This document shows, in pieces, positions 4,246-55,863 of a DNA stretch of 64,000 bases (positions are counted from its first letter, which is position 1; each line of letters starts with the position of its first letter). The notes below the pieces were generated by a model. The model made no database searches, was not told the DNA's origin, and saw only the letters and a program-made list of their open reading frames with translations. The DNA comes from Macrostomum lignano (taxonomy: Eukaryota). Where the stretch lies: positions 55,424 to 119,423 of the forward strand of contig NIVC01003101.1 of assembly GCA_002269645.1 (NCBI GenBank), read 5' to 3'. The translations under genes and the position numbers were made by a program.

Positions 4246-5004
4246 CAGCCGGACAAGCGCATATTCGTGTACCCGGGCGAGGCCCAGCTGGTACCGGCCC
4301 TGGCCGACCTGGTTGCCTCGGTGATCGGCGACTGTCTGGACAGGCGCGGCCGCTGCACCGTCGGGCTGTCGGGCGGCAGCCTGGTGGACTTCCTGACTCG
4401 CGGCCTCGCCAAGTCGGCCATCGACTGGCGCCGGGTGACGCTGTTCTACTGCGACGAGCGGCTCGTCCCCCTGGACGATCCCGAGCGGACGCACGCCCAG
4501 TTCGCCAAGTCCCTGCTGGCGCCAGGCACCGGCGCCTCCGCCGCCCGCGTCCTCGTTGTCGACGCCAGCCTGGCACCCGAGGCGGCCGCCAAGGACTACG
4601 AGGAGCAGCTCCGGGCCGCTGGCATCCTGGACGACGGGCCGGACCTCATGCTGCTGGGGCTCGGGCCCGACGGCCACACCTGCTCCCTGTTCCCCGACCA
4701 CATCGCCCTCAGCGAGCAGCGGCCCGGCGTTGCCGCGGTGCTCGACTCGCCGAAGCCGCCGCCAGCCCGAGTCACTTGCACTCTGCCGCTCATCAACCGG
4801 TCCGGCGCCGTTATCTTCGCGCTGACCGGCCGGGGCAAAGCAGCCGCCGTTGCCCGCCTGCTTGGCAAGGCGGACAGCGCGGACGGTGACGGCTGCCCGC
4901 TGCCGCCGAGCACCCGGGCGCCAGCCTCGCTGGTCCGGCCGTCCAGAGGCAGGCTGTTCTTCCTGCTGGACTCGGAGGCTGCGGCCGAGTACTCGGCTGA
5001 GTGA
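4246..5004 (+). CDS. PGLS: 6-phosphogluconolactonase, single coding exon; start codon not evident (open frame from 4177, no in-frame ATG before the homologous region)
   Basis: Motifs GLSGGS, DWRRVTLFYCDERLVP, DLMLLGLGPDGHTCSLFP, DSPKPPPARVTCTLPLIN and GRGKAAAV. In-frame TAA at 4174. In-frame acceptors ccgcag|cag at 4245 and 4248. Confidence 0.92.
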   Translation, partial: QPDKRIFVYPGEAQLVPALADLVASVIGDCLDRRGRCTVGLSGGSLVDFLTRGLAKSAIDWRRVTLFYCDERLVPLDDPERTHAQFAKSLLAPGTGASAARVLVVDASLAPEAAAKDYEEQLRAAGILDDGPDLMLLGLGPDGHTCSLFPDHIALSEQRPGVAAVLDSPKPPPARVTCTLPLINRSGAVIFALTGRGKAAAVARLLGKADSADGDGCPLPPSTRAPASLVRPSRGRLFFLLDSEAAAEYSAE

Positions 5005-39333: not shown

Positions 39334-42264
39334 ATGGGTTGCTGCTGCAGCAAGTCTTCCAGCGTTGCTCCTCTGGGTCAGGCTGACCCAAGAAATGGCA
39401 AAGCGCAAGTGCAGGCGCTCCCGCAGCAGTTAGATGCAGCGCAGCTCAGGACTCAGGATAAAACAGAGCCATGGCTTTTCCAGCCTCGGAGCGTAAATGC
39501 ATCAGCGGTGCCAAAAATCCAGACTAAATGGAGCAATGATGACGTAAGCAAACGATTAAAAGGAAGATTAATCATTTCTGAGTTTAAATAAGTGTAATAA
39601 ATTAGTTTTATTGTAAGTTTCATAAAAAAAAGCATGAAAATTTTTTCACTTGCTCAAGGTCAAGCCCAAGGTCGAGCCCAAGGTCAAGCCCAAGGTCGAG
39701 CCCAAGGTCGAGCCCAAGGTCGAGCCCAAGGTCGAGCCCAAGGTCGAGCCCAAGGTCGAGCCCAAGGTCGAGCCCAAGGTCGAGCCCAAGGTCGAGCCCA
39801 AGGTCGAGCCCAAGGTCGAGCCAAAGGTCGAGCCCAAGGTCGAGCCCAAGGTCGAGCCGCAGTCCATAATTTTTAAGCCGGATATTGCAGCACTCAAGCA
39901 TATCGATGAGCATGTCAAAAGGATGCGTTGCGCTTCGATAAGGAGAGTGGAAAAGCTCGCATGAGCATTCGACTAATTTAAAATTTTCAGACTCCCCTAG
40001 CAGCAAGGAGGTCCCTGGAGTCTCTGGCTGCCAACCTGGGCTCAGCTGCCACTTCCGATCTACAAATCTACAAATGGATACAATGGGTCTACAAATGGAT
40101 CACTGGAAATATCAGGTCGGTTCTTTTACAATCTATTTCAAGATTCATAGCAGACCAAGTATTGATGTGCATGCAGTTATGGAATTTTTCGAAAGGAGGC
40201 GTGACATGCCTTGTCAATGCGCGCATGTGCAGCAAACTATAAATAATTTTGCCTGGCCCTCAACCCTTCTTAAGACTTAATAAAAGTCTAAATAAAAATT
40301 ATTATTTTTTATTTTAGCTACGATGTGGATGGCTACTTCGGAAAGAAAGATAAGTCACCGAACGACGCCGCGTCTGTTCTGCGGACGGGAAAGTCTGTGT
40401 GCGAAGGATACGCCACGATATGCCTCAGTCTGTGTCAGTAAGTTTCAGGAGTCAAGTAAAGTGCACAGCCAAATTAAAGAACTAAATATTCGTACACTGC
40501 TACCGCAGAACTTTTAATTCGCCTGTAAAATGAAGGCTTCAGTCATTGAAACCAATTGTAGACTCTTAGGCATCGAGTGCGTCAAGATCAGTGGCTACTC
40601 GAAAGGATTTAGCTATAATCCGACTAAACCGCTTACGACTGACAAGGACACCAGTCACGCATGGAACGCTGTGAAATTGAACGGCCAATGGCGACTCATT
40701 GACACCACCTGGGGCGCTGGTCCCGTCAATTCCGATCACAAGTTTGAAAGAAACGAGACTGACTTTTACTTTCTCACAGATCCCGAGGTGTTCATCGAAG
40801 CGCACTTTCCCTATATCAACTCCGACATGGCCGAGAGCAAGAAGTGGCAACTGCTGAAGAACCCGATCGATCTGAGCACTTTCAGCAGCCGAGTACGAGC
40901 TAAAGCGAGAAAAAGCTTGCATTGAGCACCAGGTCGAGCTCGTGTCTCACAAAAAAGCTCTCGTTGATGTAGACGGCGAGGTGACGCTGAAGTTCAGAGG
41001 AACCGGAAGACCACTGACGTCATTCAGTGCAAATTTCGTAAACCCGAGCACAGGCGAGAGACTGAGCAGTGACAAGTACGTTGCTACAGTGCTCGATCAC
41101 CACAAAAACGAGGTCACGGTGACTGCACGACCTCCATCGAGTGGCGTCTACTGGAAACTGGACGTGTTTGGAAAAACGAATGAAGCTGCAAAGACATCCG
41201 ACTGCATCGTGTCGTACCACCTTCAGTCCAAGTCTGACCGCCATCTACCCGAATTTCCTGACAACAGTCTGGGATACTACGGACTGCACGAGAGTCCAGA
41301 GAAGGCTGGATTCACAAAAGACTGCGTTAATTGTGGTTTTTTTATTAAAAATCAAGGTGGAGTTCATGCTTTGGAAATTCCATTTACAAAGCCGAAGCAA
41401 GCTTTGGCGAAGCTTATTTTCGCTAATGACTCAAAGCCGGATAAGCGAGCGTGTGCCGTTGAAGTGACTAACAATTGTCTGAGGATCAACCTACGAATGC
41501 GTCGGATTGGGTATTACGTGTTGCAACTGTTTTTTAAGGAATTTAACGCACAGGATAGTGCGTTTTCCTGCCTGGCTGTTTTTCTTATTGAATGTACGAC
41601 GGCGTTGAGCGCCCTAGAGATGTTTCCTGACTATAATGGCTTCTACGGGATTCAATTGAATCCGAAGGATTTCAGTTTTGCACACCAATTTGTTACCGAA
41701 ACCGAGTTCTTCATAAAAGATTCTGACGGGCAGTGCGAACTAAAATTTCCAACGACTGAGCTCGTCTACGCCGTGGTTTCGCTCTGCAGTGCCGATGATA
41801 GCGCAGACATACGAGAATTCAGCCTTGTGGAGACCAAGAAAGACTATTTGAAAGTCAACATCAGAATGAGCCGAAATTTTTTTTATAAACTTCAACTTTT
41901 TTGCAAGCCTAGTAACTCAAACAGGGAAAGCTATAAGCTACTTGCGAATTTCCTAATCGAGTGCACACGGCCACTTGATCAACCGAGGCAGTTCCCAGAG
42001 ACCTATGCAAGTTTCTCCAAAGAACAAGTGTCCTTAGAGAGTCCGCGCGATGGTGAGCTGTCAGCAAACTCTGAAGTTGTGTTCAAATTGACCTCTCCGA
42101 CGCTGAAGAAGCTGATGGTGAATAGCAGCGTTCACAGCAGGACTGAGGCAGGCTTTGAATTCGTAGTGAGAACTGGACCAGCTGGCAGCGACCTGACGGT
42201 GTACGGGTCCGCTGACAAGAGTGCCAACTCATATGTCGGACTCTGCAAATACCGTGTCGTGTGA
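39334..42264 (+). pseudogene. KY-like copy 2, probably disabled; carries an extra C-terminal repeat module
   Basis: Exons 39334-39543 (MGCCCSK), ~39863-39922, 39991-40115, 40318-40437 and 40562-42264. The expected donor at 39923 reads AT instead of GT. A 7-nt insertion (cgagcta, 40896-40902) relative to copy 4 causes a frameshift and stop at 40925. Confidence 0.75.
39655..39860. repeat. 12-bp minisatellite in KY copy 2 intron 1
   Basis: Tandem caaggtcgagcc ending just before a gcag acceptor-like site. Confidence 0.95.
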
Positions 42265-43454
42265 CGGCGTAACAAACTTACACTAAAATAATTTGCGTAT
42301 CCACTCTGTACTTTTTATGACTTCCTAAATGATAGTTGTGTCCAAGCTAAACTTTGCATTGGTGTATTGGATAAAATTCAGAGGTTGTCTAGAGTCTTTC
42401 TATGAATAGTTAATCGTCTGATCTTGTCCGCCTGATTGTCCCAGATCACAGCACCCAGGAGATCGATTTTAGGGAGAAAAAAGTACGAAACAGTTAAATT
42501 GAACTTTTCGTCTTTTTTGGACACCTCGAGATGAAAGAAATAAAAAGCTAAAAAATGGCGGTAGCTTCATGTTTCCTTGCACTTTTTGTATCTTTAGATG
42601 TACTTTTAACTGACGGAGGAGGAAGATGCTCCATTGAAATTCCCATTTCACCTTACAGGCCACCAGCTACCAAATCTTTTGTCAATTGAAATACATATAA
42701 CAATACCAAAATTGCAAGAAAACGTGATGCTATCGCCATTTATTTTGTTTTTTTTCCTTTTCCCGTTTGCGTTTTAGATAATTTCAACTTAGCAAATTTT
42801 TAATGTAATTATTTAAAACATAGTTGTCCCAGTGATATTTGAAAGTCAATTTACACATAGTTTTACTGACAAAATTTCGTAATATTTTTATCCAGGCAAG
42901 ACTTCGTGTACAAGCTCGATCGATTTCTGAAATTTGGTTTGTCATTTTGTCAGTTTTATTATTTACGTAGAGGTTTGAAACCTTCGAATAGCTATTGTTG
43001 ATTTCAAAGACCTCAGGGTAATTTTAAACAGTGGGAAATGATTATAAACCTAAATATTTTATATATTATATATTTATATTAACGTATTATTATTATTATT
43101 GATACACTTATGCAGACGGCTAGAGTTGCGACAGTGCAGCGAACACTGGGGATGTGGAAGTGACACCAAAAACCTAGATAGATTATTGGAAAAAGAACTT
43201 GGGAAAATAGTCAGATCAAAGGCCAGCGTCCTATTCACACAACACTTGATTAGCTGAATCAAAGGCCAGCGTCCTATACTTCACAACGGGCCTTAGTTTT
43301 GTGAACATCAGCAATATTATTTATGACATTATCGCAAAAAATAAAAACCTCAGTACTCGTAGATCCTATATAAAGTTACGACCTAAAAACCGGATAGCTA
43401 TTGCTTTTGAATCCGGTGAAAGATAGAAAAACATGGACAATCAGCATTGAGCAG

Positions 43455-43548
43455 AGAACTGATCTTCTTGTGCTACCAATACGAGCATGGCGCAAAGCTG
43501 AAGAATATCGACGAACACGTCAGAATAGTGAGTAAAGAGAAGAGAATC
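43455..43548 (+). pseudogene. Orphan KY-like first-exon remnant (copy 3)
   Basis: AKLKNIDEHVRI|gtgagtaaagagaagagaatc matches copy 4 exon 1 end KKIDEHVRK|gtgagtaaagagaagagaatc, including 21 intronic bases. No downstream exons of its own were found. Confidence 0.7.
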
Positions 43549-43960
43549 AGCAAAGTCAGCAAAGTCAGCAAAGTCAGCAAAGTCAGCAAAGTCAACAAAG
43601 TCAGCAAAGTCAGCAAAGTCAGCAAAGTCAGCAAAGTCAGCAAAGTCAGCAAAGTCAACAAAGTCAGCAAAGTCAGCAAAGTCAGCAAAGTCAGCAAAGT
43701 CAACAAAGTCGGCAAAGTCAGCAAAGTCAGCAAAGTCAGCAAAGTCAGCAAAGTCGGCAAAGTCAGCAAAGTCAGCAAAGTCAACAAAGTCAGCAAAGTC
43801 AGCAAAGTCAACAAAGTCAGCAAAGTCAGCAAAGTCAGCAAAGTCAGCAAAGTCAGCAAAGTCAGCAAAGTCGGCAAAGTCAGCAAAGTCAGCAAAGTCA
43901 GCAAAGTCAGCAAAGTCAGCAAAGTCAGCAAATTCGGCAATGTCAGCAAAGTCAGCACTC
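43547..43960. repeat. 9-bp minisatellite
   Basis: About 45 copies of agcaaagtc. Confidence 0.97.
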
Positions 43961-44224
43961 AGCAAATTGGGCAAAGTCTTATTCACAAAATACGAGTACT
44001 TGATTATCTGCTAAATCCTTCACAACAGACCTCAGTTTTATGAAAATCAAAGCACAGCAGCATCATTTTTTTGCTGGACACCTTGCAGAAAAACTGAAAC
44101 CTTTATATGTTATTAGAAAGTTGCGAGGCAGAAAATGATATGAAAATTAATTAGAATGATTCGCAAAATGATTTTTATTCCGAAAATTCTGCGTTTTGTA
44201 ATGAAAAATCTATGCTGTTGCTAT

Positions 44225-44925
44225 TGTTGTGTCTCGGCCTAATGGCCGCTGGACGGGTCAAGGTTCGGGCCCTCCCCGCCTGAGACACCCCTGTCCCAGC
44301 CCTCACCCCGGCTATTCCTACCCTGTCTCGCTCGGTTCGGCGAGAGTTCGCCTGACCGAACACCCTGGGATCGGCGAGAGTTCACCGTTCCCAGGTCCCT
44401 GCAGATCCCGGCCCCACGCGGCAACCCAGAAGAACGAAAGCTCGAGCTCACCTCCTCTTGATATATCGAGTTACTAACGAAGCGTTTATTGGCCCGAAGC
44501 AGTTATTGGCACGCGAAGGCAGAGGTACGCCGATGAACGCAAAAACAGTAAGAACGAAGCGGACACCAATAGAGAGCAAACGTGGAGCGCAGCCCGCTCA
44601 GGGCTAGCATTTAAATAATACACAAAAAAGGGGGAGGGGTGGGGCAGAATGGAGACGGCGAGCCAAACCCTGGGGCCCAGCCGGCTTATCAGCCAGCCAG
44701 CCAATACGAGCAGCCCCAGGGTGAGGCGGGCAACGAGGGAGGGGGGGGGCACCCAGATTGGACAGAGATTGGGCCGGGGGCTGGGTGCAAAGGGCTAGGC
44801 CAGGGTTGAGACTTACGCCTCTCACAAACCCTGGCCCGGGCGCGAGACGGGGGACGGGGCGGGGTGGCATGAAAACTGAAAACAAAAGTACGAGTACATA
44901 CACACTGGAAGGGCGCAGCCCAACA
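44225..44925 (-). repeat. 3' LTR
   Basis: Direct repeat of 52167-52868. The only difference seen is G9 vs G10 in one homopolymer. In element sense it has TATA-like tatttaaa and an aataaa signal. Confidence 0.97.
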
Positions 44926-44938
44926 TCCTCCCCCTCCA
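44926..44938 (-). other. Polypurine tract
   Basis: Element-sense ggagggggagga immediately precedes the 3' LTR TG. Confidence 0.9.
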
Positions 44939-45165
44939 AGAAAAAGAAGAGGAGAAAGGGGATGTCAAGCAAAAAGCAACGCATGAACAAGCAAGTCTGA
45001 AAAAAAGTTTATTCAAGAAACGACGGCCGAAAAATAACAGAAAAACTTTGACGCGACGCGTGGATATCGCCGGCATTACAAAAAACAAAAACGAAAAAAT
45101 GAAAACGGGACACAAACTATTGCGTACGCAAAAATTGAAAACGGGCTTAAGAACGCAATTCTACT

Positions 45166-46842
45166 CTACAATCGGCCAAAAAATCTACTACAGTTGGTCG
45201 CAAACAGTCGAGTCCAGTACCTGCGATCACATTCACTGTCCGCTAGGGCTTCCGGCACGAACTTGATGGCTGTCGGGTCCTTGGGGTCTCCACCAAACGG
45301 TGCGGCCGATGTCACTAGCAGGCGCTGCCGCGGGAGACGCTTAGCCCGTTGGACCGCTCGCGGGGATCCTCGGCACCGAGCGGACACCTCGAAGAAGACC
45401 CCGTGGCACTTGCTCACCAGCGCGGCCTCGACGGCCTCCGGCAAGTCCAGGTCCTCGGCCAGCATGACGCTCATCGCTTGAAACTCCGGCTGCCGGAGGA
45501 ATCCTAGGGCGACCGCCCAGGCAGGTTCGCCGCCTTCAACTCGGAACAAAACCGGCAGGCCGAACTCCTTGGCAAGCAAGAACTGCTCCATCGCCGCCGT
45601 TAACTGGTCCTGGCGCTGCGACCTCTCAGCGTCCCAATTGAGCTCGACTTCGCCGACCGCCACGACACGCGGCCAGCTACCCGCTAGAAATCGTCGTACA
45701 TCGTCTCGCAGCGATGGCCACCACGGTGCAGCACTGGCCTTCAGGCCCAGGGCGAACACGATCCGTCGGTCTTGCAGCAGTGGTCGGACAACGGGACATT
45801 CTAGACGCAGGCAGTACGGCGAGTTTACAGCCGCTAGACATCGACGCACGCCACGAAGGTCCTCGGGCTGAATCGACCGGCCCAGCCTCGTTAGGTATGC
45901 CTTTGCATCGACGAGACGCTTAGCCGAGCTGACCTTGCGCTGATTCGGGTCGTCACGGGGGGAGACCTCCTGGACCGTGTCGGCCGGTCGTACTTGCTCG
46001 GGGTCGACACCCGTTAACTCTTCGGTCGCCAAGTCGCGCTGGGCCGTCAGCGGAGTCTGCGAAAGGTGCGGCCCGTCACTCCCCTCCTCCGGGCGCCGCG
46101 CGAGGCCAGGATCCACTAAGAGAGACAGACCCCGGAGCCTCCCCAACAAGGGACCCCCCAACTCACACAGCTCAAAACCCCGCACAGCCAACAACACGCA
46201 CTCAAACGCCGCCTGCAGCACCGAAGGCGGGACCCTCCGACACCTCCCGGAACCACCACCAGAACCTCTCTTCCGCCCATACTGATTGCACAGAAACGAC
46301 ACAGACACTGCTAAGAATCTAGACAACTGCTCAGGCACACTCACACCAGCCCCATCAAGAAACCTCGCCACCTCCTGAACCACCAGGCAAGCTCCTTCAC
46401 TATCCCCAGCCCTCAACCGCGCCAGCAGCGCACCCCTCAGCCGCCTACACTCAGCAAGCGCAGCCGGAGCCAATAACTCGGCTGGGATCTCCGCGTGAAC
46501 TGGAGCTTCCCCTGCGGCGCTTCCCTTAAGACTAGCCAAAGCTAACCTGACCTGCTCGGGCAACTCAACGTCAGGGGGAGGATTGAAAAAGTAGGCGTAC
46601 TTTAACACCCCTTGACACGCTGCCTCCCCAACCCGATCGTATACTTCCCGAAACACTGGGTCAGATAAAACGCACATCGCCATCACGTCTCGCTGAGACT
46701 CCGGAGACTCTACCTCGGCAGGACAGACGCGGGGCCGCTTTGAGTACAGACGACTACACGCTGCCTCAATCTCCGCAGAGTTAGCAGTCCGACCCACGCC
46801 TAACACGCCATACAAATCAGTCGGTGTCGTTGGCGACGACAT
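45166..46842 (-). CDS. Retrotransposon ORF3 (558 aa from ATG 46842): J-domain-like N-terminus plus TatD-fold C-terminus
   Basis: N-terminus DLYGVLGVGRTANSAEIEAACSRL...VLSDPVFREVYDRVGE follows the DnaJ pattern. The C-terminal ~250 aa have LVDAKAYL, RVVAVGEVELNW, AKEFGLPV, LPRQRLLVTSAAPF and TNCSRFF, in the order and spacing of TatD motifs. Confidence 0.82.
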   Translation of the reverse strand: MSSPTTPTDLYGVLGVGRTANSAEIEAACSRLYSKRPRVCPAEVESPESQRDVMAMCVLSDPVFREVYDRVGEAACQGVLKYAYFFNPPPDVELPEQVRLALASLKGSAAGEAPVHAEIPAELLAPAALAECRRLRGALLARLRAGDSEGACLVVQEVARFLDGAGVSVPEQLSRFLAVSVSFLCNQYGRKRGSGGGSGRCRRVPPSVLQAAFECVLLAVRGFELCELGGPLLGRLRGLSLLVDPGLARRPEEGSDGPHLSQTPLTAQRDLATEELTGVDPEQVRPADTVQEVSPRDDPNQRKVSSAKRLVDAKAYLTRLGRSIQPEDLRGVRRCLAAVNSPYCLRLECPVVRPLLQDRRIVFALGLKASAAPWWPSLRDDVRRFLAGSWPRVVAVGEVELNWDAERSQRQDQLTAAMEQFLLAKEFGLPVLFRVEGGEPAWAVALGFLRQPEFQAMSVMLAEDLDLPEAVEAALVSKCHGVFFEVSARCRGSPRAVQRAKRLPRQRLLVTSAAPFGGDPKDPTAIKFVPEALADSECDRRYWTRLFATNCSRFFGRL

Positions 46843-47178
46843 GGTCCTCCTGCAATGATGACATTTAAACCCAATCACTACCTATGCCTTGCGGACTAGC
46901 AACTGTGACCCTGACCTGACCCATCCTATGACATGTTTATTTTACAATACGATTGAGAACGCTTCTTGCCTAGCATACTTTGTAATTTTAATACATTTAA
47001 TGTTTTTTACGTGCTTTCCATGCGTTCCATTTTATGATTTTTTTGTGCTTTGGGTTGTATCATTTTTTTCATTTTAGGTTATTTTAGGCTTTCTACCATA
47101 GACAACAGCGTGGAGGCATTAATACAAGTGCATATTAAAAATCAATTTATGACGACCGCCTTGTGAGCCCACTGCGAA

Positions 47179-50100
47179 TTAACGATACAATACCGGATTC
47201 CCGTAATACGCTGGGGGCACACCCCGACGCTCGCGCAGTCTGCGCGGAGACACGGCTGGCGCCGCTGGAGCCACCGGTGCGCATGGCGCAACTGGCGTTC
47301 CCGGCCCTACTATCCCATGCCGAGGCCCAACGGCAACTGGTGGCACCACATACGAGTAAAACTCCTCCTCCTCCTCAAGTTCCGGCTCTTTAGTCGCCGG
47401 CCCCGCGGGCTCCTGTCTGCACCCTGCCGGCTCAGGCGGATGCGCCGACCGGCGCTGCACTGCCGTATGCCTATTCATCAACCTGAACTGCTCAGGCCGC
47501 TCGGGTACTTTTCGCAAATTATTATAATGCACTATTTTGCTCTTTCCCCTATTGGCGTGCTTTACCCGGTAATTCAAATCGGATATCTTCTCTAACACCT
47601 TCGCCGGCCCCTTCCAATTGCAATGGAACTTGGCTGCCTCCCCTGCCTGCAGCGCAGGCGAGTATTCTAGGACGGCATCCCCACTTCTATGGCCGGGCCT
47701 CGCACCCTTGAGTCGTACAGCACTTTCTGTTTCCTCTGGTACTGCTGCAGGTTGGTCCGCACCTGCGAATGAGCCTCAGCCAGACTATTACCTAATGACT
47801 GAACATACGCCGGAGCACTGGCAGGAATGGACTCAGGCAAGGTTCCGATGTCCACTGGAAGCCGCATCTCCCTGGCGTACAGCATGTAGTACGGGGTGTA
47901 CCCCGTGCCTCTGTGAACGCTGCTACGGTACGCCATGAGAGACGGGTGGATCAGATCCTCCCAGTCTCCTTCGCCCACCGACTCACTCATCCTGCACTTG
48001 ATCATTGACTTCAACGTCTTATTGAAACTCTCAGCCTGACCATCAGCCATCGGGTGATAGGAGGACGTTCTGCATTTCTTAACGGCAAGCAACCGACACA
48101 ACTGCTTCATCAAAGCCGACTCAAAATTGGTGCCCTTATCGGTGACTAGAAATTCAGGACAACCAAAGTGCGCAATCCAGTGATCAAAAATCGCTCGCGC
48201 CACCGTCGGGGCTCGCTGATTCGACAAGGGCACCGCCACCGGCCACTTAGTAAAAGAATCCTGGATTGTCAGCACGAATCGATTGCCACCTCTGGACTTG
48301 GGCAACGGCCCGACAATGTCACTCATGATCCTCTGGAAAGCTCCTTCCGAGCAGATTGGCTGCAAAGGCGCCCGGTTGCTGCGCCCAGGCTTCGCCTTCG
48401 CACAGTGGACACAGCTCCGGCAATACTCTTCCACGGAACGACTCAGCCCCGGCCACCAGTATCTCGCCTTCACTTTCTCTTGTGTCTTCCTAACCCCAAG
48501 GTGCCCTCCTGCAACCCCATCATGAAGCTCACTGAGCACTTTCGGCAGCAAAGCCGGCGGCAGCAAGATCTTTTTCTGGCACCCACTCCCGGGACTCTGA
48601 AAATACAACAGATCAGACTCTACTCTTATCAGCTGCCGTTGTGCCCACAGCACACGCTCCTCCCACGACATCACTCTAGGCGCACTGGGGTTCGAACCCG
48701 GGTCCAGGGCATAGGAGCGGACAGCTGCAAGCTTCTTCTCGGCCACTTGCGCCTGCTGGACTTCCTTCGAAGACAGCCCACTGCCAAACACCGCGTTCAC
48801 TACTGGCACATTCTCGCTAAACTGGCAGCTAGGGCAGCTCTCATGGCCAGCGTGTTTTCGGTACTTGCGAGACAGCGAATCAGCGTTGCCGTGCTCCTTG
48901 CCTGGCCTGTGAATGATCTCAAAGTCGAAGTTCTGGAGCGACTCAAGCCACCTTGCGCACTGACCCTCTACGTCCTTCAGACTGGCTAGCCACTGCAAAG
49001 CTTTGTGGTCTGAACGAACAGTGAACTTTCTACCTAACAAATAGTACCTATACTTTTTGACGAAGTGCACGACGGCAAGCAACTCTAACCTGGTGGTGCA
49101 ATAATTTTTCTCCGCCGCATGAATCATCCTAGACCCGTAAGCGATCACCTTCTCACGGCCATCTGCTTGACGCTGTGACAGGACGGCTCCCAGCCCGACG
49201 CGCGAACTGGCGTCCGTGTCGAGGATGAACTCCCCGGCACCAGGCGAAAAATCCGGGAATGCCATCACATTCGGTGAACACAAAGCGTCTTTCAGCCTGC
49301 AAAACGAGCTCTCCTCTTCACTACCCCACTCAAACTTCACTCCGTCTGCGGTTAACCTATACAGCGGCGCTGCAATCTCTGAAAACTGCGGGATAAATGA
49401 CTGATAGTAGGCGCACGTACCCAGGAATGCCTGCACCTTCTTGGCGCTACATGGCCTCGGCCAATTCTGGATCTCCTCGCACTTGCTCGGATCCGTTGCG
49501 ATCCCCTCCTGAGAGACGATGTGGCCCAGAAACTTCACCCGCTCTGCGAGGAACACACACTTGGCGGGCTTCAGCTTGACATTGGCATCCCTCAGGCACT
49601 GGAAAACATGCTTCAATCGCTCGAGATGCTGACCCACCGACTTGGCGAACACGACTATATCGTCAAAGTACACCAGGCACTCCTTCCAGTTAACCTCAGA
49701 CAGGGCCATAGACATTAGCCTGGCGAACGTAGCGGGAGCATTGCGCAAGCCAAAACTCATGCACTTCCAGGCGAACTGACCCCTGTTGGGTACCACGAAC
49801 GCCGTTTTCAACTGGTCCTTCGGCTCAATCGGGCACTGATGATAGCCGGAGGCCAGATCCATCGTCGAGAAAACACAGTTCCCTCCTAGCGCATCAAGCG
49901 TCTCGTCCATCCGCGGCGGTGGGTAAGGATCTGGCACTGTGACCTCGTTAAGGCGCCGATAGTCTAGACACAACCTCAAGCTACCGTCGGCCTTTTTAAC
50001 CGGCACGATCGGGCTCGCCCACGGAGAGTAGCAGGGATAGATGCGATCCTGCTGCAACAACTCATCAACCTGCTTATCAATTTCCTCCTTCCAGCGCGGT

Positions 50101-51116
50101 GGAATCCTACGCGCGGGCTGACTTACTGGCTTGGCGTTGCCGGTGTCAATCTCATGCGCCATCAAGTGTGACTGTCCCAACTCCGAGCTATCCCTGGCAA
50201 AGACATCACGATTCCGAGCCATCAGGCGCTCAAACTCGTGCTTCTCATCGCCCGTCAGGCCACATCCTCCCCACTCCTTGACATCGCTGAGGGGGTTCCA
50301 GTCGTCTCGGACACTCTCCACCGAGTTCACCTGCCACCCAGCTGGCTGCTGGGCCGCCACTGGGGAGAACCAACCAATTCGGCTTCCCTTCCTTAATGAC
50401 AGACTGCATCCTGACGTGTTCAACACCCTGACAGCCAAGCGACCGTCCCCGTCAGGCATCTGTACCGATCTGGCCACCATCTGCTCGTTACTCACTCTCC
50501 TCTCAGACTCCACAATGCCTAGGAACTGAACCCCAGAGGGAACCCTTCTCTGCAACCTGACGTGCACCACCTTCTCTTGACCTGCATTGAACTGCTCAGG
50601 CTGACTCAGCACCAGACGGCAAAGACGCGGCTTATCTGCTGATAAGCGAAACGGATACACACAGGATGCAGTCTGCAAGCAATTCCTAGCAAAGTCAATC
50701 GCCATCCCGTGTCTCACGAAAAAGTCAGTGCCCAGAATACATGCCACAGCCAGTTCCTCGACCACAGCGAACTCGTGCAAAAACTCGGTGTCCCCAACAG
50801 AAAACTTCATCGTCACCATTCCATGTACAGCAATCGGTTCCCCATTGGCAGCGAAAACGGAAAAATTCGGCAAATTCGGCAATAAGTCAATGTCGGCTTT
50901 TTTAGACTTCAGGAAACGGTTGCTTAACAACGACACGGTGGCCCCGCTGTCAAGCAGACATGCAATCGGGGGCCCAAACCTAAACTGTGCATCCACATAG
51001 CCCAGTCCCTGCCGACTCAGCACACTCTGGGACAAGGCCGCGGCCCCCGATGCACCCGGATTCACTGACGCTGGGGCCCGGACGGGTGCCCCGGCCGAGC
51101 CCCCAATCCGTTTCCC
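47179..51116 (-). CDS. pol: Pol polyprotein (protease, RT, RNase H, integrase with GPY/F tail); one frameshift near 47680
   Basis: LLDSGAT protease, SPWASPIVPVKKADGSLRLCLDYRRLN and YFDD RT, FILDTDAS RNase H, HHCC plus IMSDIVGPLP / VTDKGTNF / GQAESFNKTL integrase. The tail WKGPAKVLEKISDLNYRV continues in ORF 47179-47598 after a 1-nt loss in a G run. Confidence 0.95.
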
Positions 51117-52042
51117 GAACCCGACTGGTCCCACCGACGATAGCAGCGGTTGCGCATGTGCCCTGACTGGCCACACTCCCGGCAGACCACTGCATTACGG
51201 CACCGAGCCGTAGTATGCCCTGTCTGCAGGCACCGACCACACTGCCTCTGCTGCTGACTCTGCTCAGGGGCTCGATGCTGCAAGCTCACTTTTGGCTGCT
51301 CAGACCTTGCTGTCGCCATCGGCGCAGTGGGCGCTGCAGCACTTGCTTTTAGCTGAGCCACTTCCGCTTTCAGAGCTGCTATCTCGGCGGCTGCCCTGGA
51401 CTCCTGGCTGTTGCCAGCCGCTGCGGCCTGACCCCCCACCATGTGCACAGCTCGCTTGCCCTCGGGCTCCATCAGAGCCAACGATGCCCTCACTTGACGC
51501 ACCCGCCTAATAGCGTCCTGGAGCGTCTCTGGCGCTTGCAGCAGCACGCTCTCCAGCACCCGGGCTGGCACCCGAATCCCCTTCAAAAACCTGTCTTTCA
51601 CCAACTCTTCTCGCTGGGCCGCTGGCAGCATTGGGTACGATTTTCTCATAAGCTCCTTGAGCACGTCTGCATATTCTTCAATGGGCTCGCCATCTTTCTG
51701 ATTCCTACTCTGGAACTCGGTCTTGTAATCTTGAGCAGTCCTATTCTCATCAAACCTAGCCTCTAGCTGCTCAACAAACTCATCATACGGCAAATCATCG
51801 GCCAACTCAAGATTCGCAACAGCCTTAAAAGCAGTATTAAAGTCAAGCAGACTGAGCAGCGCCTGCTTGCGCTGATCCCCTAGAATATGAGCCGCCTCAC
51901 AATACCCTGTGAATTGTTGCATCCAAAGGGCAAAGTCCTGTGTGGGCACGTACTTATTTGGCCTCGGCACCCGCTGTGCCACATTAAGTTCGTTTTGCAG
52001 ACGCGCCGTCAGGGCGTCAATCAGATCGTCTAAATTGGCCAT
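51062..52042 (-). CDS. gag: Gag with two CCHC zinc knuckles
   Basis: ATG at 52042 (MANLDDLIDAL). Retrotransposon gag core RNQKDGEPIEEYADVLKEL. Knuckles CGRCLQTGHTTARC and CRECGQSGHMRNRC. Confidence 0.95.
   Translation of the reverse strand: MANLDDLIDALTARLQNELNVAQRVPRPNKYVPTQDFALWMQQFTGYCEAAHILGDQRKQALLSLLDFNTAFKAVANLELADDLPYDEFVEQLEARFDENRTAQDYKTEFQSRNQKDGEPIEEYADVLKELMRKSYPMLPAAQREELVKDRFLKGIRVPARVLESVLLQAPETLQDAIRRVRQVRASLALMEPEGKRAVHMVGGQAAAAGNSQESRAAAEIAALKAEVAQLKASAAAPTAPMATARSEQPKVSLQHRAPEQSQQQRQCGRCLQTGHTTARCRNAVVCRECGQSGHMRNRCYRRWDQSGSGNGLGARPGHPSGPQRQ
51073..51116 (-). promoter_or_regulatory. -1 programmed ribosomal frameshift signal between gag and pol
   Basis: Slippery heptamer G_GGA_AAC (51116-51110) in gag phase, 6-nt spacer, then stem GGGGCUCGG/CCGGGCCCC (51103-51095 with 51081-51073). 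pol is in the -1 frame. Confidence 0.85.
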
Positions 52043-52146
52043 GGCTACAAAAACACAGAGACAACCGAAGCAAACAACACACAAATAAACTAGGCAACAC
52101 ACACAACCCTAAACACACGGCAGGACAGCAGGGGAGAGGACCGCTG

Positions 52147-52164
52147 ATCCTGGTCACGGCACCA
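52147..52164 (-). other. Primer binding site complementary to the tRNA-His 3' end
   Basis: tggtgccgtgaccaggat lies 2 nt inside the 5' LTR and closely matches the known His PBS TGGTGCCGTGACTCGGAT. Confidence 0.88.
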
Positions 52165-52166
52165 CT

Positions 52167-52868
52167 TGTTGTGTCTCGGCCTAATGGCCGCTGGACGGGT
52201 CAAGGTTCGGGCCCTCCCCGCCTGAGACACCCCTGTCCCAGCCCTCACCCCGGCTATTCCTACCCTGTCTCGCTCGGTTCGGCGAGAGTTCGCCTGACCG
52301 AACACCCTGGGATCGGCGAGAGTTCACCGTTCCCAGGTCCCTGCAGATCCCGGCCCCACGCGGCAACCCAGAAGAACGAAAGCTCGAGCTCACCTCCTCT
52401 TGATATATCGAGTTACTAACGAAGCGTTTATTGGCCCGAAGCAGTTATTGGCACGCGAAGGCAGAGGTACGCCGATGAACGCAAAAACAGTAAGAACGAA
52501 GCGGACACCAATAGAGAGCAAACGTGGAGCGCAGCCCGCTCAGGGCTAGCATTTAAATAATACACAAAAAAGGGGGAGGGGTGGGGCAGAATGGAGACGG
52601 CGAGCCAAACCCTGGGGCCCAGCCGGCTTATCAGCCAGCCAGCCAATACGAGCAGCCCCAGGGTGAGGCGGGCAACGAGGGAGGGGGGGGGGCACCCAGA
52701 TTGGACAGAGATTGGGCCGGGGGCTGGGTGCAAAGGGCTAGGCCAGGGTTGAGACTTACGCCTCTCACAAACCCTGGCCCGGGCGCGAGACGGGGGACGG
52801 GGCGGGGTGGCATGAAAACTGAAAACAAAAGTACGAGTACATACACACTGGAAGGGCGCAGCCCAACA
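52167..52868 (-). repeat. 5' LTR
   Basis: 702 bp, TG...CA, near-identical to 44225-44925. Confidence 0.97.
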
Positions 52869-53651
52869 CTATAAAATCCATTGAGAGCTAAAACAAGCCA
52901 TGAGCAGAGAGACCATCTACTTGCGCTAATTTTGCATCTCTAGCAACAATTAGAGACCTGAATTGAAAGAAAATGAAGAATGAAACCCGATGCAACACTG
53001 AAAGGCACAGAAGAATCGTACAGAATTAAGAAAGAGAACAGAGGAGATACAGTGAGCCGCGCTCATAAATTTATGGCTTGTAATTAATTTTAGAATGATG
53101 AATACACAAATAGAGCTGCTTCGCTTCTCACGACGATATAATCTATTTCTGTAGCACTCAGTGGCAGAGAAACTCTTCAAAATGATCATTGAAATGAGAG
53201 CTGCTCCAGTTTCTTTTAACAGCCACTTCTGCTTAGGTTTAACAAGAGACGAGTAACCGGCGAGAATAGTTTACTGAGTACGGGGGGCGGGTAGCTGAGA
53301 CCCATTGCAGCATATCCTGAAGTGGCGTGGGTGGCGCCATTCAAACAAGTGCATTGTCCATTGCGCACTGCAGGAAGACTTGAATATGGGATAGAGATTC
53401 TGGCCCCATACTCAGTACAAACTAAAGCTTTTTTTCACTTTGTGTTGCTAGGCAGCTGGGCATCTGAGTACGCATGCAACTGCCGATGCGGATGGTTTTA
53501 TAAAACTGTCCAATGAGATGAGCTCTCTAAGTACTAATAGTTGTTTTTATTAAAGCTGTTCGCGCGAACTTGAGAACCGAAATAATTTCGGATTTCATTT
53601 TCAAGCCAAAAGCAACTTAATTATCAATACTCAACTGCAGAGCACTGAGCA

Positions 53652-55863
53652 ATGGGCTGCGCCCCGAGCAAAAGAGCGGTAGCGCCTACTCCGGCGGCCA
53701 AACAGTCCGCCAGGACGACTGCGGATTTCTCGGCGTTCAAGAAAATCGACGAGCACGTTAGAAAAGTGAGTAAAGAGAAGAGAATCTATTATGAAATTAG
53801 GCGCAGTTTCAGCTACAAAACTGTAATAGTCCAGCAATGCGAAATGCGATTTTGCTAATTGGCTCATAATTCAGGCCCGTTATCAATATGATTTGATTGG
53901 AATGTTTCATTGTTGGCAGAAGGTGCTTTGGGTCGAAAGCAATGGTCTCGTGAAACTAGGCTATTAAAAATAAATTTATTCGCCTATTTTTCCAATATTT
54001 AATCTCTTTCAAGCGTCGAACAGGCTTCAAAAGCATTCCATATATTTCCCCTCAGACTCCGCCGGCCGCTAAGCAGTCGCTTGAGTCCCTGGCCACCTAC
54101 CTCGGCTCGGCAGCGAGCACTGATTTAGAAAAAATTCGAGCTGTTTACAAATGGGTCACAGCTAACATCAGGTAGGTGATAAGCTGCTCTCTTCCTGTTG
54201 AGCACTTTCAGACGTGAGAACACCATTATTTTTCGCATCCCCATGCTGCAGTTACGATATTGACGGATACTTCGGGAAAAAAGAAAAGTCTCCCAACGAT
54301 CCGCAATCAGTCCTCAAGAATGGGACTTCGGTGTGCGAAGGATACGCTTCAATCAGCCTCAGTCTACTTCAGTAAGTAGTATAAAGCAAATTTCTTTAGT
54401 TAATTTCTTTAGTCAATACATAATGCATTGTGAACTTCTTTGAAATATTTAATACGTTTCCTGACTTCGACAGGCAAAATATATTTTGAAATAGCGAAAA
54501 ACTTTACTTAAACATTTTCAGACTCTTGGGCATCGAGTGCGTCAAGATCAGCGGCTACTCGAAAGGATTTGGCTACAATCCGACTAAACCGCTTACGACT
54601 GACAAGGACACCGATCACGCATGGAACGCTGTGAAATTGAATGGCGAATGGCGATTCATTGAGACAACCTGGGGCGCTGGTCACGTCAATTCCGATCACA
54701 AGTTTGAAAGAAACGAGACTGACTTTTACTTTCTCACAGATCCCGAGGTGTTCATCGAGGCGCACTTTCCCTATATGAACTCCGACATGGCCGAGAGCAA
54801 GAAGTGGCAACTGCTGAAGAACCCGATCGATCTGGACACTTTTAACAACCGAGTAAAGCGAGAAAAAGCTTGCATTGAGCACCAGGTCGAGCTCATGTCT
54901 CACAACAAAGCTCTCGTTGATGTAGACGGCGAGGTGACGCTGAAGTTCAGAGGAAACGGAAAACCACTGACGTCATTCAGTGCAAAGTTTGTAAACCCGA
55001 GCACAGGCGAGAGACTGAGCAGTGACAAGTACGTTGCTACAGTGCTCGATCACCACAAAAACGAGGTCACGGTGACTGCACGACCTCCATCGAGTGGCGT
55101 CTACTGGAAACTGGACGTGTTTGGAAAAACGAATGAAGCTGCAAAGACATCCGACTGCATCGTCTCGTACCACCTTCAGTCCAAGTCTGACCGCCATCTA
55201 CCCGAATTTCCTGACGACAGTCTGGGATACTACGGACTACACGAGAGTCCAGAGAAGTTTGGCTTTTCAAAACATAATTTCTGTTCTAAGGAAGGTTTTT
55301 GGCTGCAAGTTGACGGCGGTGCTCAGAGTGAGTTCCAACTGAAAATTCCCGCTTCTACTTTGCTTTCAGCGTCGGCAGAATTTCTTAGTGCTGATAAAAG
55401 CGCGAGAGAAGAAAGCTTCAGCTTCGTTGAGTACAATGAAGGCTTTCTTAAAGTCAGTCTTAGAATGGGTCACGCTGGTTTTTACCAGCTACAGCTGTTT
55501 TGTAAGGAAAGTGGATCAAAGAGCAACTCACTTCCGATGCTGGCAAATCTCCTGGTTGAGTGCGTGAAGCCCATGAAGCAACCGAAACCGTTTCCGACTT
55601 CCTACACCAGTGTTATTGAAGAGCAGGTCACGCTGGTCTGTCCTCGTGATGGCAACCTGCCTGCCAACTCCGAGATTCGATTCAAGCTGTCATCGCCAAG
55701 GCTGAAGAAGCTGATGGTGAATAAGAAAGTTTACGACGCGACTAAGGACGGCTTTGACATCGTTGAGAAAACTGGCTCTGTCGGTAGCGACTTGTCGGTG
55801 TTCGGCACTGCTGACGCAAATGCTGCGTCCTTCACGGGACTCTATAGGTTCAAAATCATATGA
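53652..55863 (+). CDS. KY/hillarin-like transglutaminase-fold protein, copy 4, intact (563 aa): join(53652..53765,54056..54171,54252..54371,54522..55863)
   Basis: MGCAPS start, SVCEGYA, DHAWNAVKLNG and FIETTWG (Glu at the Asp position). GT-AG introns and a total of 1692 nt in frame. Confidence 0.9.

What the first reader, a model, noticed from the sequence alone, without database searches (positions are those of the whole stretch)
45166..46878. Gypsy retrotransposon carries a J-domain-like/TatD-fold fusion ORF in the env position
Seen: a 558-aa uninterrupted ORF, same strand as gag-pol, between pol and the PPT of a complete element. It shows no signal peptide, furin site or transmembrane segment. 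The first ~73 aa follow the DnaJ pattern and the last ~250 aa follow TatD motifs in order. Established: extra ORFs here are usually env or occasionally other captured domains; I know of no J plus TatD cargo in an LTR element, though I could not search. Inference: a captured and fused accessory gene, kept open in a recently active element, possibly modulating host chaperones or nucleic-acid defence.
Basis: partly seen in the sequence, partly recalled or inferred. Interest (0 to 1): 0.92.

Follow-up and report, generated by a model that had tools for sequence, protein, structure and literature searches.

The report
Flatworm retrotransposon carries pseudo-J/pseudo-TatD gene
A young, multi-copy Ty3/gypsy retrotransposon of the flatworm Macrostomum lignano carries, where a retrovirus would carry env, a conserved third gene whose two recognisable domains (chaperone-partner J domain, TatD nuclease barrel) have both lost their catalytic residues, so it is probably a non-enzymatic helper protein and not an enzyme.

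Summary
A 558-aa ORF (45166-46842, minus strand) lies between pol and the polypurine tract of an LTR element (44225-52868) with a 4-bp target duplication and LTRs that differ by one indel. The host is Macrostomum lignano. Ten full-length copies at different sites all carry ORF3.

Both domain calls are real but weak. Every PDB sequence hit is a J protein or a TatD. A profile of the C-terminus hits only TatDs. A model built on a TatD alignment superposes on TatD structures (TM 0.7-0.8).

Both domains look inactive. HPD reads RPR. All five conserved histidines and the Glu/Asp of the TatD metal site are replaced, while the structural residues are kept.

A relative about 50% identical has the same losses, and dN/dS is about 0.24, so the protein is under constraint.

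A sister gypsy family in the same genome has, in the same slot, a canonical J domain (HPD intact) fused to a chromodomain.

A consensus donor in the LTR and an acceptor 7 nt before the ATG suggest an env-style spliced mRNA.

Verdict: a new variant of the known non-env ORF3 accessory genes, probably an adaptor and not an enzyme. Its function is unproven. In this copy pol has one frameshift.

The parts
52869..52872 (-). Target-site duplication (ATAG), 5' side
   Evidence: Read directly from the sequence. Other copies have their own 4-bp duplications.
52167..52868 (-). 5' LTR (702 bp, TG..CA). Contains a TATA-like TATTTAAA at 52552-52559, AATAAA at 52427-52432 and a consensus splice donor (exon ends at 52394, GT at 52392-52393).
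   Evidence: blastn of the two LTRs: 99.86% identity, one indel. Sequence read. The donor 20-mer recurs in the LTRs of most sister copies. The UniProt gene model P0132 uses this junction.
52147..52164 (-). Primer-binding-site-like sequence starting with TGG, 2 nt after the LTR. The tRNA it matches was not identified.
   Evidence: Sequence read.
51062..52102 (-). gag (346 aa, open)
   Evidence: Weak Pfam hits to Retrotrans_gag, PNMA and a zinc knuckle. Its frame sits at -1 relative to pol, with a 115-nt overlap.
47179..51176 (-). pol (protease, RT, RNase H, integrase, integrase C-terminal domain). Broken by one frameshift and no stops in this copy.
   Evidence: Pfam RVT_1 6.5e-33, RT_RNaseH 1.9e-33, Integrase_H2C2 1.8e-21, rve, gag-asp_proteas, Integrase_p58_C. 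tblastn of the uninterrupted 1213-aa sister pol P0122 gives 2 HSPs in 2 frames and 0 stops.
46843..47178 (-). AT-rich spacer (GC 0.38) ending in the splice acceptor ...TCATCATTGCAG|G. The AG is at 46850-46851, the exon starts at 46849 and the ATG follows 7 nt later.
   Evidence: Sequence read. The acceptor 22-mer is identical in 10 of 10 copies. P0132 and P0130 both join upstream exons here.
45166..46842 (-). ORF3: 558 aa plus stop, the accessory gene in the env position.
   Evidence: Present in 10 of 10 full-length copies and uninterrupted in 4.
46624..46818 (-). J-like domain (aa 9-73). The HPD position reads RPR (aa 36-38).
   Evidence: Pfam DnaJ positions 1-63 of 63, 18.3 bits. PDB DNAJB13 E 6e-5, with alignments showing RPR opposite HPL/HPD. 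Bacterial DnaJ hits in the whole library. UniProt calls the models 'J domain-containing protein'.
45928..46557 (-). Middle region (aa 96-305): predicted helices followed by a low-complexity linker, with no family match.
   Evidence: No Pfam hit. Low-confidence helices in the single-sequence model. The linker is not alignable with the diverged relative L011.
45175..45927 (-). TatD-fold pseudo-nuclease domain (aa 306-556), basic (pI 9.5).
   Evidence: Pfam TatD_DNase E 5.7e-5. A profile search of PDB hits only TatDs, best 2.6e-5. ORF3 keeps 24 of the 51 columns that are at least 90% conserved in TatDs, but all 5 His plus Glu510 and Asp512 equivalents are replaced. AF2 pLDDT 84.9. Foldseek top 15 are all TatD, TM 0.70-0.80. 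pI.
44926..44937 (-). Polypurine tract GGAGGGGGAGGA
   Evidence: Sequence read.
44225..44925 (-). 3' LTR (701 bp), with AATAAA at 44485-44490.
44221..44224 (-). Target-site duplication (ATAG), 3' side

Best explanation
ORF3 is a genuine, selectively maintained accessory gene of a recently active Ty3/gypsy family of Macrostomum lignano. It encodes a cytosolic or nuclear protein, not a membrane protein, with three parts: an N-terminal J-like domain that has lost HPD, a helical and disordered middle, and a C-terminal TatD-fold barrel that has lost its metal site.

Shown:
- its position, copy number and conservation;
- the two folds;
- the loss of the catalytic motifs in two lineages;
- a canonical J-domain ORF3 in a sister family.

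Inferred, step 1 (about 0.6): the protein is translated from a subgenomic RNA. This RNA is made either by cis-splicing the LTR donor at 52394 to the acceptor at 46849, or by spliced-leader trans-splicing at that acceptor, as retroviral env and Cer1 cerv are expressed.

Inferred, step 2 (about 0.35): it works as a non-catalytic adaptor. The pseudo-J hairpin would contact the host Hsp70/J-protein system without stimulating the ATPase, as Pam16 and HSV-1 ICP22 do. The basic pseudo-TatD barrel would bind, without cutting, nucleic-acid ends of the element's RNA or cDNA. Together they would couple the replication complex to chaperones or shield cDNA ends.

The stated confidence refers to 'functional non-enzymatic accessory protein'. 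The specific adaptor mechanism is much less certain.
For: Integral to the family:
- 10 of 10 full-length copies are 99.1-100% identical over the whole 8.6 kb, including ORF3.
- They have different flanks and 4-bp target duplications.
- Intra-element LTRs differ by 0-1 substitutions in 9 of 10 copies.

Constraint:
- Compared with the relative L011/P0131 (about 50% aa identity over aa 310-555), 237 codons give pN 0.35, pS 0.70 and dN/dS about 0.24. The bootstrap range of pN/pS is 0.42-0.60. Identity by codon position is 0.60, 0.69 and 0.39.
- The linker does not align, so the constraint is specific to the domain.
- ORF3 has GC3 0.66, like pol, whereas the flanking spacers have GC 0.38-0.40.

Folds.

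Loss of catalytic residues while the scaffold is kept:
- The TatD losses are shown.
- RPR stands in place of HPD.
- Even conservative changes in HPD abolish Hsp70 ATPase stimulation, and pseudo-J proteins (Pam16, DNAJB13, viral ICP22) are known to be functional (PMC13254874).

Sister family: L013 ORF3 scores DnaJ 60.7 bits with HPD intact, plus Chromo 49.4 bits, in the same slot, with an acceptor directly before its ATG.

Splice signals:
- The sequences were read, and the acceptor is conserved in 10 of 10 copies.
- An independent gene model (UniProt A0A1I8HEH7) uses exactly this junction.
- Trans-splicing affects about 39% of M. lignano transcripts (PMC5730564).

The TatD-like domain is basic, with pI 9.5.
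Against: - No expression data were available here. The splice junction rests on sequence motifs and on a gene model whose evidence basis is unknown.
- Within the family the variants look neutral: 8 non-synonymous to 3 synonymous distinct changes. Indel density is about 2.6 times that of gag and pol.
- Six of ten copies have 1-3 single-base indels in ORF3.
- The diverged relative is itself read in two frames and its genomic context is unknown.
- The structural model was built on an alignment of TatDs, so the fold match is not independent.
- Loss of both catalytic motifs is also what decay would produce.
- The two ORF3 J domains are only 26% identical, so common descent is not shown.
Confidence: 0.6

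Rival explanations
1. Passenger in decay: ORF3 is a captured gene fragment with no present function. It is open in some copies only because the family is very young.
For: - Both catalytic motifs are lost.
- Within the family there are 8 non-synonymous to 3 synonymous variants, and the singletons are 7 to 1.
- Six of ten copies have single-base indels, and ORF3's indel density is higher than that of gag and pol.
- Rotifer ORF3s likewise showed no departure from neutrality within genomes (PMC5408684).
Against: - dN/dS is about 0.24 against a relative about 50% identical that shares the same substitutions at the catalytic positions. The pseudo-enzyme state is therefore old, yet the scaffold has been kept.
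- 24 of 51 conserved TatD scaffold columns are retained.
- Composition is coding-like, between AT-rich spacers.
- The acceptor is conserved in 10 of 10 copies.
- 7 of the 9 indels lie in homopolymer runs, in a PacBio/Canu assembly that was polished with short reads, which is unreliable in repeats.
- Variants shared between copies are 1 non-synonymous to 2 synonymous.
Confidence: 0.2
2. Host-directed decoy: the protein does not serve the element's own complex. It acts as a dominant-negative mimic that titrates a host J protein or Hsp70, or competes with a host TatD-type or other 3'-5' nuclease for cDNA ends.
For: - The Pam16-Pam18 precedent, in which a pseudo-J domain binds and inhibits a true J domain, and open questions about pseudo-J proteins competing for Hsp70 (PMC13254874).
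- A retained scaffold with a dead active site is the usual shape of an enzyme mimic.
- TatD enzymes are 3'-5' exonucleases and AP endonucleases acting on DNA (PMC10085689).
Against: No evidence of any interaction. No host TatD or J partner has been identified. The sister family keeps a canonical HPD J domain, which points to use of Hsp70, not its inhibition.
Confidence: 0.12
3. Active enzyme and co-chaperone, the strongest form of the first reader's idea: ORF3 stimulates Hsp70 through its J domain and cuts nucleic acid through its TatD domain.
For: Homology to both families. One conserved Glu (aa 397) and one Asp (aa 311) of the TatD site remain. A designed J-like sequence without HPD has been reported to stimulate Hsc70 (PMC13254874).
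Against: - HPD is replaced by RPR, and even H-to-Q or D-to-N changes abolish stimulation.
- All five histidines conserved in at least 99% of TatDs, and the Glu-x-Asp pair, are replaced. The N-terminal motif is neither HxH (class II) nor (G/A)xN (class I).
- The C-terminal domain contains a single histidine.
Confidence: 0.05
4. Envelope-like or membrane-active ORF3.
For: [quoted passage not shown]
Against: No hydrophobic N-terminus, no segment above the transmembrane hydropathy threshold (maximum 1.49), and no match to any env family. Both recognisable domains are those of soluble proteins.
Confidence: 0.02

Closest known systems
Non-env ORF3s of bdelloid rotifer LTR retrotransposons (GDSL esterase, DEDDy exonuclease; Rodriguez, Kenefick & Arkhipova 2017, PMC5408684)
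   Same: [quoted passage not shown] It encodes a hydrolase or nuclease-superfamily domain, has no transmembrane or coiled-coil env features, and is presumed to come from a spliced message. Its role is unknown.
   Different: The domain families differ (J and TatD, not GDSL or DEDDy). In most rotifer ORF3s the catalytic residues are intact; here they are lost. This ORF3 has two domains.
CERV of C. elegans Cer1 (PMC10309623)
   Same: A large ORF in the env position that is not an env. It is expressed from a spliced mRNA that uses conventional host splice signals retained in the genomic RNA, and it acts as a non-enzymatic regulator of the element's own RNA.
   Different: No sequence or domain similarity. 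CERV's function (genomic RNA export) has been demonstrated, whereas nothing has been demonstrated here.
Sister M. lignano gypsy family (locus L013, NIVC01004994.1), ORF3 = J domain + chromodomain
   Same: Same genome and a related pol (47% identity). ORF3 is in the same slot, has an N-terminal J-type domain, and has an acceptor directly before the ATG.
   Different: Its J domain is canonical (HPD intact, 60.7 bits). The C-terminal module is a chromodomain, not a TatD fold. It is 212 aa, not 558. The two J domains are only 26% identical.
Pseudo-J ('type IV') proteins: Pam16/Tim16, DNAJB13, HSV-1 ICP22; and the viral J domains of polyomavirus T antigens (PMC13254874)
   Same: A recognisable J fold with HPD replaced non-conservatively. 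There are viral precedents for recruiting Hsc70 with or without HPD.
   Different: Not orthologous to any of them. The best PDB hit being DNAJB13 reflects general J similarity. T antigens keep HPD.
Class II TatD nucleases (E. coli YcfH and YjjV, S. aureus SAV0491, human TATDN3)
   Same: These are the best sequence and structure matches, with the same (beta/alpha)8 barrel and conserved scaffold motifs.
   Different: The HxH motif and the other metal ligands are absent. Only one Glu and one Asp are kept.

Membership tests
Ty3/gypsy (Metaviridae-like) LTR retrotransposon | Two LTRs with TG..CA ends, a target-site duplication, and PBS and PPT next to the LTRs | tested here: met
   4-bp duplications were also found at three other copies.
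Ty3/gypsy (Metaviridae-like) LTR retrotransposon | gag followed by pol with the domain order PR-RT-RH-IN | tested here: met
   Pfam order gag-asp_proteas 68-153, RVT_1 393-554, RT_RNaseH 649-750, Integrase_H2C2 873-930, rve 946-1042, then Integrase_p58_C. The best pol relatives are flatworm and nematode Ty3-type elements. pol has one frameshift in this copy.
J-domain protein (Pfam PF00226) | Sequence match to the ~65-residue J-domain model at family threshold | tested here: inconclusive
   18.3 bits against a gathering score of 27.8, although all 63 model positions are covered. PDB E 6e-5. Whole-library E about 5e-4. UniProt's automatic name for the gene models is 'J domain-containing protein'. 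The single-sequence model shows four helices at low confidence.
J-domain protein (Pfam PF00226) | His-Pro-Asp motif in the loop between helices II and III, needed for Hsp70 ATPase stimulation | tested here: not met
   RPR at aa 36-38 is aligned to HPD/HPL in the PDB alignments. The requirement is from PMC13254874. The domain therefore counts as a 'J-like' or type IV pseudo-J domain.
TatD family (Pfam PF01026) | Sequence and fold match to the TatD (beta/alpha)8 barrel | tested here: met
   A single sequence scores 23.1 bits, below the gathering score of 27. A three-row profile hits only TatD structures (11 of 11, best 2.6e-5). 24 of 51 conserved columns are kept. The AF2 model has pLDDT 84.9 and the Foldseek top 15 are all TatD. 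Caveat: the model's alignment consisted of TatDs.
TatD family (Pfam PF01026) | Metal-binding and catalytic residues: N-terminal HxH or (G/A)xN, GxHP His, Glu, two further His, and Glu-x-Asp | tested here: not met
   The replacements are H to K, H to Y, H to K, H to R, H to L, E to T and D to A. Only Glu397 is kept. The same pattern is seen in the diverged relative. Motif classes are from PMC10085689.
TatD family (Pfam PF01026) | Mg/Mn-dependent nuclease activity | not testable with these tools
   This would need biochemical data.
Retroviral or errantiviral env | Signal peptide, transmembrane anchor, and a furin-processed SU/TM architecture | tested here: not met
   Maximum hydropathy 1.49 and a polar N-terminus. 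Two R-x-K/R-R strings occur, but in no secretory context. There is no env family hit.
Accessory ORF3 of LTR retrotransposons expressed from subgenomic spliced RNA | [quoted passage not shown] | tested here: met
Accessory ORF3 of LTR retrotransposons expressed from subgenomic spliced RNA | A spliced (or trans-spliced) mRNA joining the leader to ORF3 | tested here: inconclusive
   A donor AG|GTGAGC lies in the LTR and an acceptor TTGCAG|G lies 7 nt before the ATG. The acceptor is conserved in 10 of 10 copies. One public gene model uses the junction. No read-level evidence was available.

The most novel reading that the evidence does not exclude
A lineage of Macrostomum Ty3/gypsy elements encodes its own J-domain proteins in the env slot, so these retrotransposons bring their own Hsp70 co-chaperone module. 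One family couples a canonical J domain to a chromodomain, which could bring Hsp70 to chromatin or to the integration complex. The window's family has turned both of its modules into pseudo-domains: a pseudo-J plus a pseudo-TatD that binds nucleic acid without cutting it. If so, these would be the first retroelement-encoded J proteins, a parallel to polyomavirus T antigens and HSV-1 ICP22. They occur in a species whose LTR elements are already known to exploit the heat-shock response.
Probability: 0.3. Interest if true: 0.78.

Novelty: new variant of a known kind. Interest (0 to 1): 0.6.

Why it matters
- Accessory genes of LTR retrotransposons show what, beyond gag and pol, helps an element persist. 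Very few have a known role.
- A J-type module found in two gypsy families of one genome, once canonical and once degenerate, points to the Hsp70 system as a host dependency. These elements may address it with their own protein, as some DNA viruses do. In M. lignano, other LTR families have independently acquired heat-shock elements in their promoters (PMC12801592).
- The TatD-fold domain is a clear example of a pseudo-enzyme kept under selection in a mobile element.
- There is also a practical point. UniProt lists gene models containing this ORF as host 'J domain-containing protein' (A0A1I8I457, A0A1I8HEH7). They are transposon ORF3s fused to unrelated sequence.

Tried and rejected
- Word-seeded homology search with ORF3: no hits, not even the near-identical UniProt models.
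- AF2 on the single sequence: pLDDT 39, unusable.
- dN/dS within the family: 11 distinct substitutions in ORF3, so no power.
- Canonical heat-shock elements in the LTRs, prompted by PMC12801592: none; the window's matches lie elsewhere and are fewer than chance expects.
- ORF3-like or J-like ORFs in four other related elements: a third M. lignano family (L014), Trichobilharzia szidati (L015) and two ENA contigs (L016, L017). None was found.
- Exact look-up of the ORF3 proteins (window, L005, L010, L013) in the 15-billion-protein collection: absent.
- The profile search with ORF3 plus TatDs returned only bacterial TatDs. None of the 120 listed carries a J domain, so no cellular J+TatD architecture was seen.
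- Supplementary tables of PMC12801592 are not held.
- The run accession of the diverged relative (SRR31628403) appears in no paper, so its species is unknown.
- BFVD fold search: a single giant-virus TatD-like protein and no retro-transcribing virus.
- Rejected: the idea that the bacterial contig L012 (a degenerate TatD next to clpP/clpX) is the source of ORF3. It is an ordinary bacterial context.
Full report
1. WHAT IS THERE

The finding's coordinates hold an open frame on the minus strand. It is open from 46878, the first ATG is at 46842, and the stop codon is at 45166-45168, giving 558 aa.

It lies inside a complete-looking LTR retrotransposon, 44225-52868, also on the minus strand.
- The LTRs are 702 and 701 bp. 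They differ by one indel and no substitution, and they begin with TG and end with CA.
- The element is flanked by a 4-bp duplication, ATAG. A TGG-initiated primer-binding-like site lies 2 nt after the 5' LTR, and the purine run GGAGGGGGAGGA abuts the 3' LTR.
- gag (51062-52102) and pol (47179-51176) give the Pfam order protease, RT, RNase H, integrase zinc finger, integrase core, integrase C-terminal domain.
- pol sits in the -1 frame relative to gag.
- In this copy pol has one frameshift and no stop codons, compared with sister copies that encode an uninterrupted 1213-aa pol.
- ORF3 is separated from pol and from the 3' LTR by AT-rich spacers (GC 0.38-0.40). ORF3 itself has the composition of the element's coding regions: GC3 is 0.66, the same as in pol.

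2. HOST AND COPY NUMBER

The pol protein is 100% identical to PAA81732.1 of the free-living flatworm Macrostomum lignano. The window is the region of contig NIVC01003101.1 (assembly GCA_002269645.1) fetched as locus L003.

Ten full-length copies were fetched.
- All align to the window's element over its whole length, including ORF3, at 99.1-100% identity.
- Their flanks all differ, and four of them show clean 4-bp target duplications.
- In nine of ten copies the two LTRs differ by 0-1 substitutions.

This is therefore a very young family that has inserted many times, and every copy examined carries ORF3.

ORF3 is uninterrupted in 4 of the 10 copies. The other six carry 1-3 single-base indels, nine events in all. 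Seven of the nine lie in homopolymer runs of at least 4. The assembly is PacBio/Canu polished with short reads (PMC5730564), so these indels cannot be told apart from assembly errors.

The pol frameshift is different. It is shared by six copies at independent sites, it is not in a homopolymer, and four copies have the uninterrupted frame. It is therefore inherited and not an assembly artefact.

3. THE DOMAINS

Single-sequence searches give weak but specific matches.
- Pfam DnaJ covers all 63 model positions at 18.3 bits. Pfam TatD_DNase scores 23.1 bits. Both are below their gathering scores.
- Against PDB sequences, all 40 hits at E<=10 are J proteins (34) or TatD proteins (6). The best is DNAJB13 at E 6e-5.
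- An exhaustive phmmer search of 1.8 billion representatives found 12 proteins at E<=1e-3. Three are M. lignano gene models containing this ORF, one is a diverged relative, six are bacterial TatDs (best non-fragment E 2e-5) and two are bacterial DnaJs (about 5e-4).
- A profile of the ORF3 C-terminus plus the diverged relative hits 11 PDB sequences, all TatD family. The best are S. aureus TatD/YcfH at 2.6e-5, E. coli YjjV at 7e-4 and human TATDN3 at 1.2e-3.
- With an alignment of 84 TatDs, AlphaFold2 models aa 300-558 as a (beta/alpha)8 barrel with pLDDT 84.9 and pTM 0.85. The 15 best Foldseek matches in PDB are all TatD-family structures, TM 0.70-0.80.

That last result shows compatibility only. 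It is not independent proof, because the alignment consisted of TatDs.

4. BOTH DOMAINS HAVE LOST THEIR ACTIVE MOTIFS

In the J-like domain, the position of His-Pro-Asp reads Arg-Pro-Arg (aa 36-38). Even H-to-Q or D-to-N changes abolish stimulation of the Hsp70 ATPase (PMC13254874).

In the TatD-like domain, ORF3 keeps 24 of the 51 columns that are at least 90% conserved among 84 TatDs. The retained residues are glycines, alanines, prolines, hydrophobic residues, Gln and Asn, that is, the scaffold.
- All five conserved histidines are replaced, by K, Y, K, R and L.
- The Glu-x-Asp pair is replaced by T and A.
- Only Glu397 of the GE motif, and the Asp preceding the first motif, remain.
- The N-terminal motif is neither the class II HxH nor the class I (G/A)xN (PMC10085689).
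- The domain is basic (pI 9.5) and contains one histidine.

The protein has no hydrophobic N-terminus and no transmembrane-grade segment.

5. IS IT UNDER SELECTION?

Within the family there is no power to decide. ORF3 has 8 non-synonymous and 3 synonymous distinct variants. The variants shared between copies are 1 to 2, and the singletons are 7 to 1.

The diverged relative decides the question. It is a 1.2-kb Logan contig from run SRR31628403, of unknown species, read in two frames.
- It is about 50% identical in protein over ORF3 aa 310-555.
- It has the same losses at the catalytic positions.
- Over 237 aligned codons, pN is 0.35 and pS is 0.70 (near saturation), and dN/dS is about 0.24. The bootstrap interval of pN/pS is 0.42-0.60.
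- Identity is 0.69 at second codon positions and 0.39 at third positions.
- The preceding linker does not align at all.

So the TatD-like domain has been kept as a protein, in its non-catalytic state, over a long divergence.

6. A SISTER FAMILY

The closest other M. lignano pol (P0043, 47% identity) belongs to an element in locus L013, whose LTRs are 99.3% identical. Between its pol and its 3' LTR lies a 212-aa ORF (L013:13976-14614).
- It has a canonical J domain: Pfam 60.7 bits, E 1.4e-16, HPD intact.
- This is followed by an acidic stretch and a chromodomain: 49.4 bits, E 4.2e-13.
- Its ATG directly follows ...TTACAG.

The two ORF3 N-termini are 26% identical (pairwise E 2e-5), so common origin is possible but not shown.

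A third M. lignano family, a Trichobilharzia relative and two ENA relatives have no such ORF.

7. EXPRESSION SIGNALS

The LTR contains, in order:
- TATTTAAA;
- AATAAA, about 120 nt downstream;
- AAGAGGAG|GTGAGC, 33 nt further on.

ORF3's ATG is preceded by TCATCATTGCAG|GAGGACC. The acceptor 22-mer is identical in all ten copies.

A UniProt gene model from another assembly (A0A1I8HEH7 = P0132) joins exactly these two points. A second model (P0130) uses the same acceptor.

M. lignano trans-splices about 39% of its transcripts and has polycistronic precursors (PMC5730564). The acceptor could therefore serve either cis-splicing or spliced-leader addition. This is inference from sequence; no reads were examined.

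8. INTERPRETATION

The descriptive conclusion is firm. ORF3 is an integral, conserved accessory gene of an active gypsy family, and it encodes a soluble protein with a pseudo-J domain and a pseudo-TatD domain.

The mechanism is inferred. The most likely reading is a non-catalytic adaptor expressed from a subgenomic RNA.
- The J-like hairpin would contact the Hsp70/J-protein system without stimulating it. Precedents are Pam16 and HSV-1 ICP22.
- The basic barrel would bind, without cutting, nucleic acid of the element.

I give about 0.6 to 'functional non-enzymatic accessory protein' and about 0.35 to the specific adaptor mechanism. The rivals are a decaying passenger (0.2), a host-directed decoy (0.12), an active enzyme and co-chaperone (0.05) and an env-like protein (0.02).

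9. COMPARISON AND NOVELTY

Non-env ORF3s are known.
- Rotifer elements carry GDSL esterase or DEDDy exonuclease ORF3s (PMC5408684).
- Cer1 carries CERV, made from a spliced mRNA and needed for genomic RNA export (PMC10309623).
- Plant elements carry various additional ORFs.

No paper in the searchable library links TatD or DnaJ/J domains with retrotransposon ORFs. The recent survey of 137 M. lignano LTR families mentions neither (PMC12801592).

I therefore rate this a new variant of a known kind. The recurrence of a J module in two families, in a species whose LTR elements exploit the heat-shock response, still keeps it interesting, and I score it 0.6.

Noticed in passing
L013:13976-14614 (+), M. 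lignano contig NIVC01004994.1: A sister gypsy family carries, in the env slot, a 212-aa ORF with a canonical J domain (HPD intact, 60.7 bits) and a chromodomain (49.4 bits). In chromoviruses the chromodomain normally sits at the integrase C-terminus, not in a separate ORF3.
   Followed up: partly
window 47179-51176 and loci L001-L010: The single pol frameshift of the window's copy is shared by six of the ten copies at independent insertion sites. Four copies have the uninterrupted 1213-aa pol. The site is not a homopolymer. A subfamily with a truncated or shifted integrase end seems to have kept inserting, presumably with help from intact copies.
   Followed up: partly
window 37230-38459, 40530-42264, 54526-55863 (+): Three tandem host paralogues with KY-like immunoglobulin-like domains (Pfam PF23265) and transglutaminase-like N-terminal parts. 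The element is inserted between the second and the third.
   Followed up: partly
window 43411-44000 and 39650-39960: Long, nearly perfect short-period tandem arrays: about 47 or more copies of a 9-bp unit roughly 220 bp from the element's 3' end, and a second array that gives GLDL/KVEP-type repeats in translation. These fit the species' known richness in simple repeats.
   Followed up: no
With no signal peptide they are most likely meaningless.
   Followed up: yes
UniProt models P0129 (A0A1I8I0H8, 3511 aa), P0130 (A0A1I8I457, 1229 aa), P0132 (A0A1I8HEH7, 173 aa): Public gene models fuse ORF3, or its first exon, to LTR-derived or unrelated flanking sequence and are named 'J domain-containing protein' or 'ribonuclease H'. 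ORF3 is not annotated as a stand-alone protein in any source searched.
   Followed up: partly
L012:426-1004 (ENA metagenome contig, next to clpP and clpX): A bacterial TatD homologue (P0135, 32% identical to ORF3) has also lost several metal ligands (the Glu of the GE motif, two His and the Asp). Degenerate TatDs therefore also occur in bacteria.
   Followed up: partly
P0073 (ENA, 1756 aa), from the pol search: A gypsy pol relative whose product also carries GDSL/SGNH lipase domains (PF13472, PF00657), reminiscent of the rotifer esterase ORF3s.
   Followed up: no
L013:14559-14960 (+): About 900 nt lie between the sister family's ORF3 stop and its 3' LTR. They hold a further 133-aa ORF with no match that overlaps the end of ORF3 in another frame.
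   Followed up: no
window 4195-5004 (+), 9364-10194 (-), 16029-16910 (-), 27297-28397 (+): Other host coding pieces in the window: glucosamine-6-phosphate isomerase/6-phosphogluconolactonase, an MFS transporter fragment, ankyrin repeats, and an AMP-binding enzyme.
   Followed up: no
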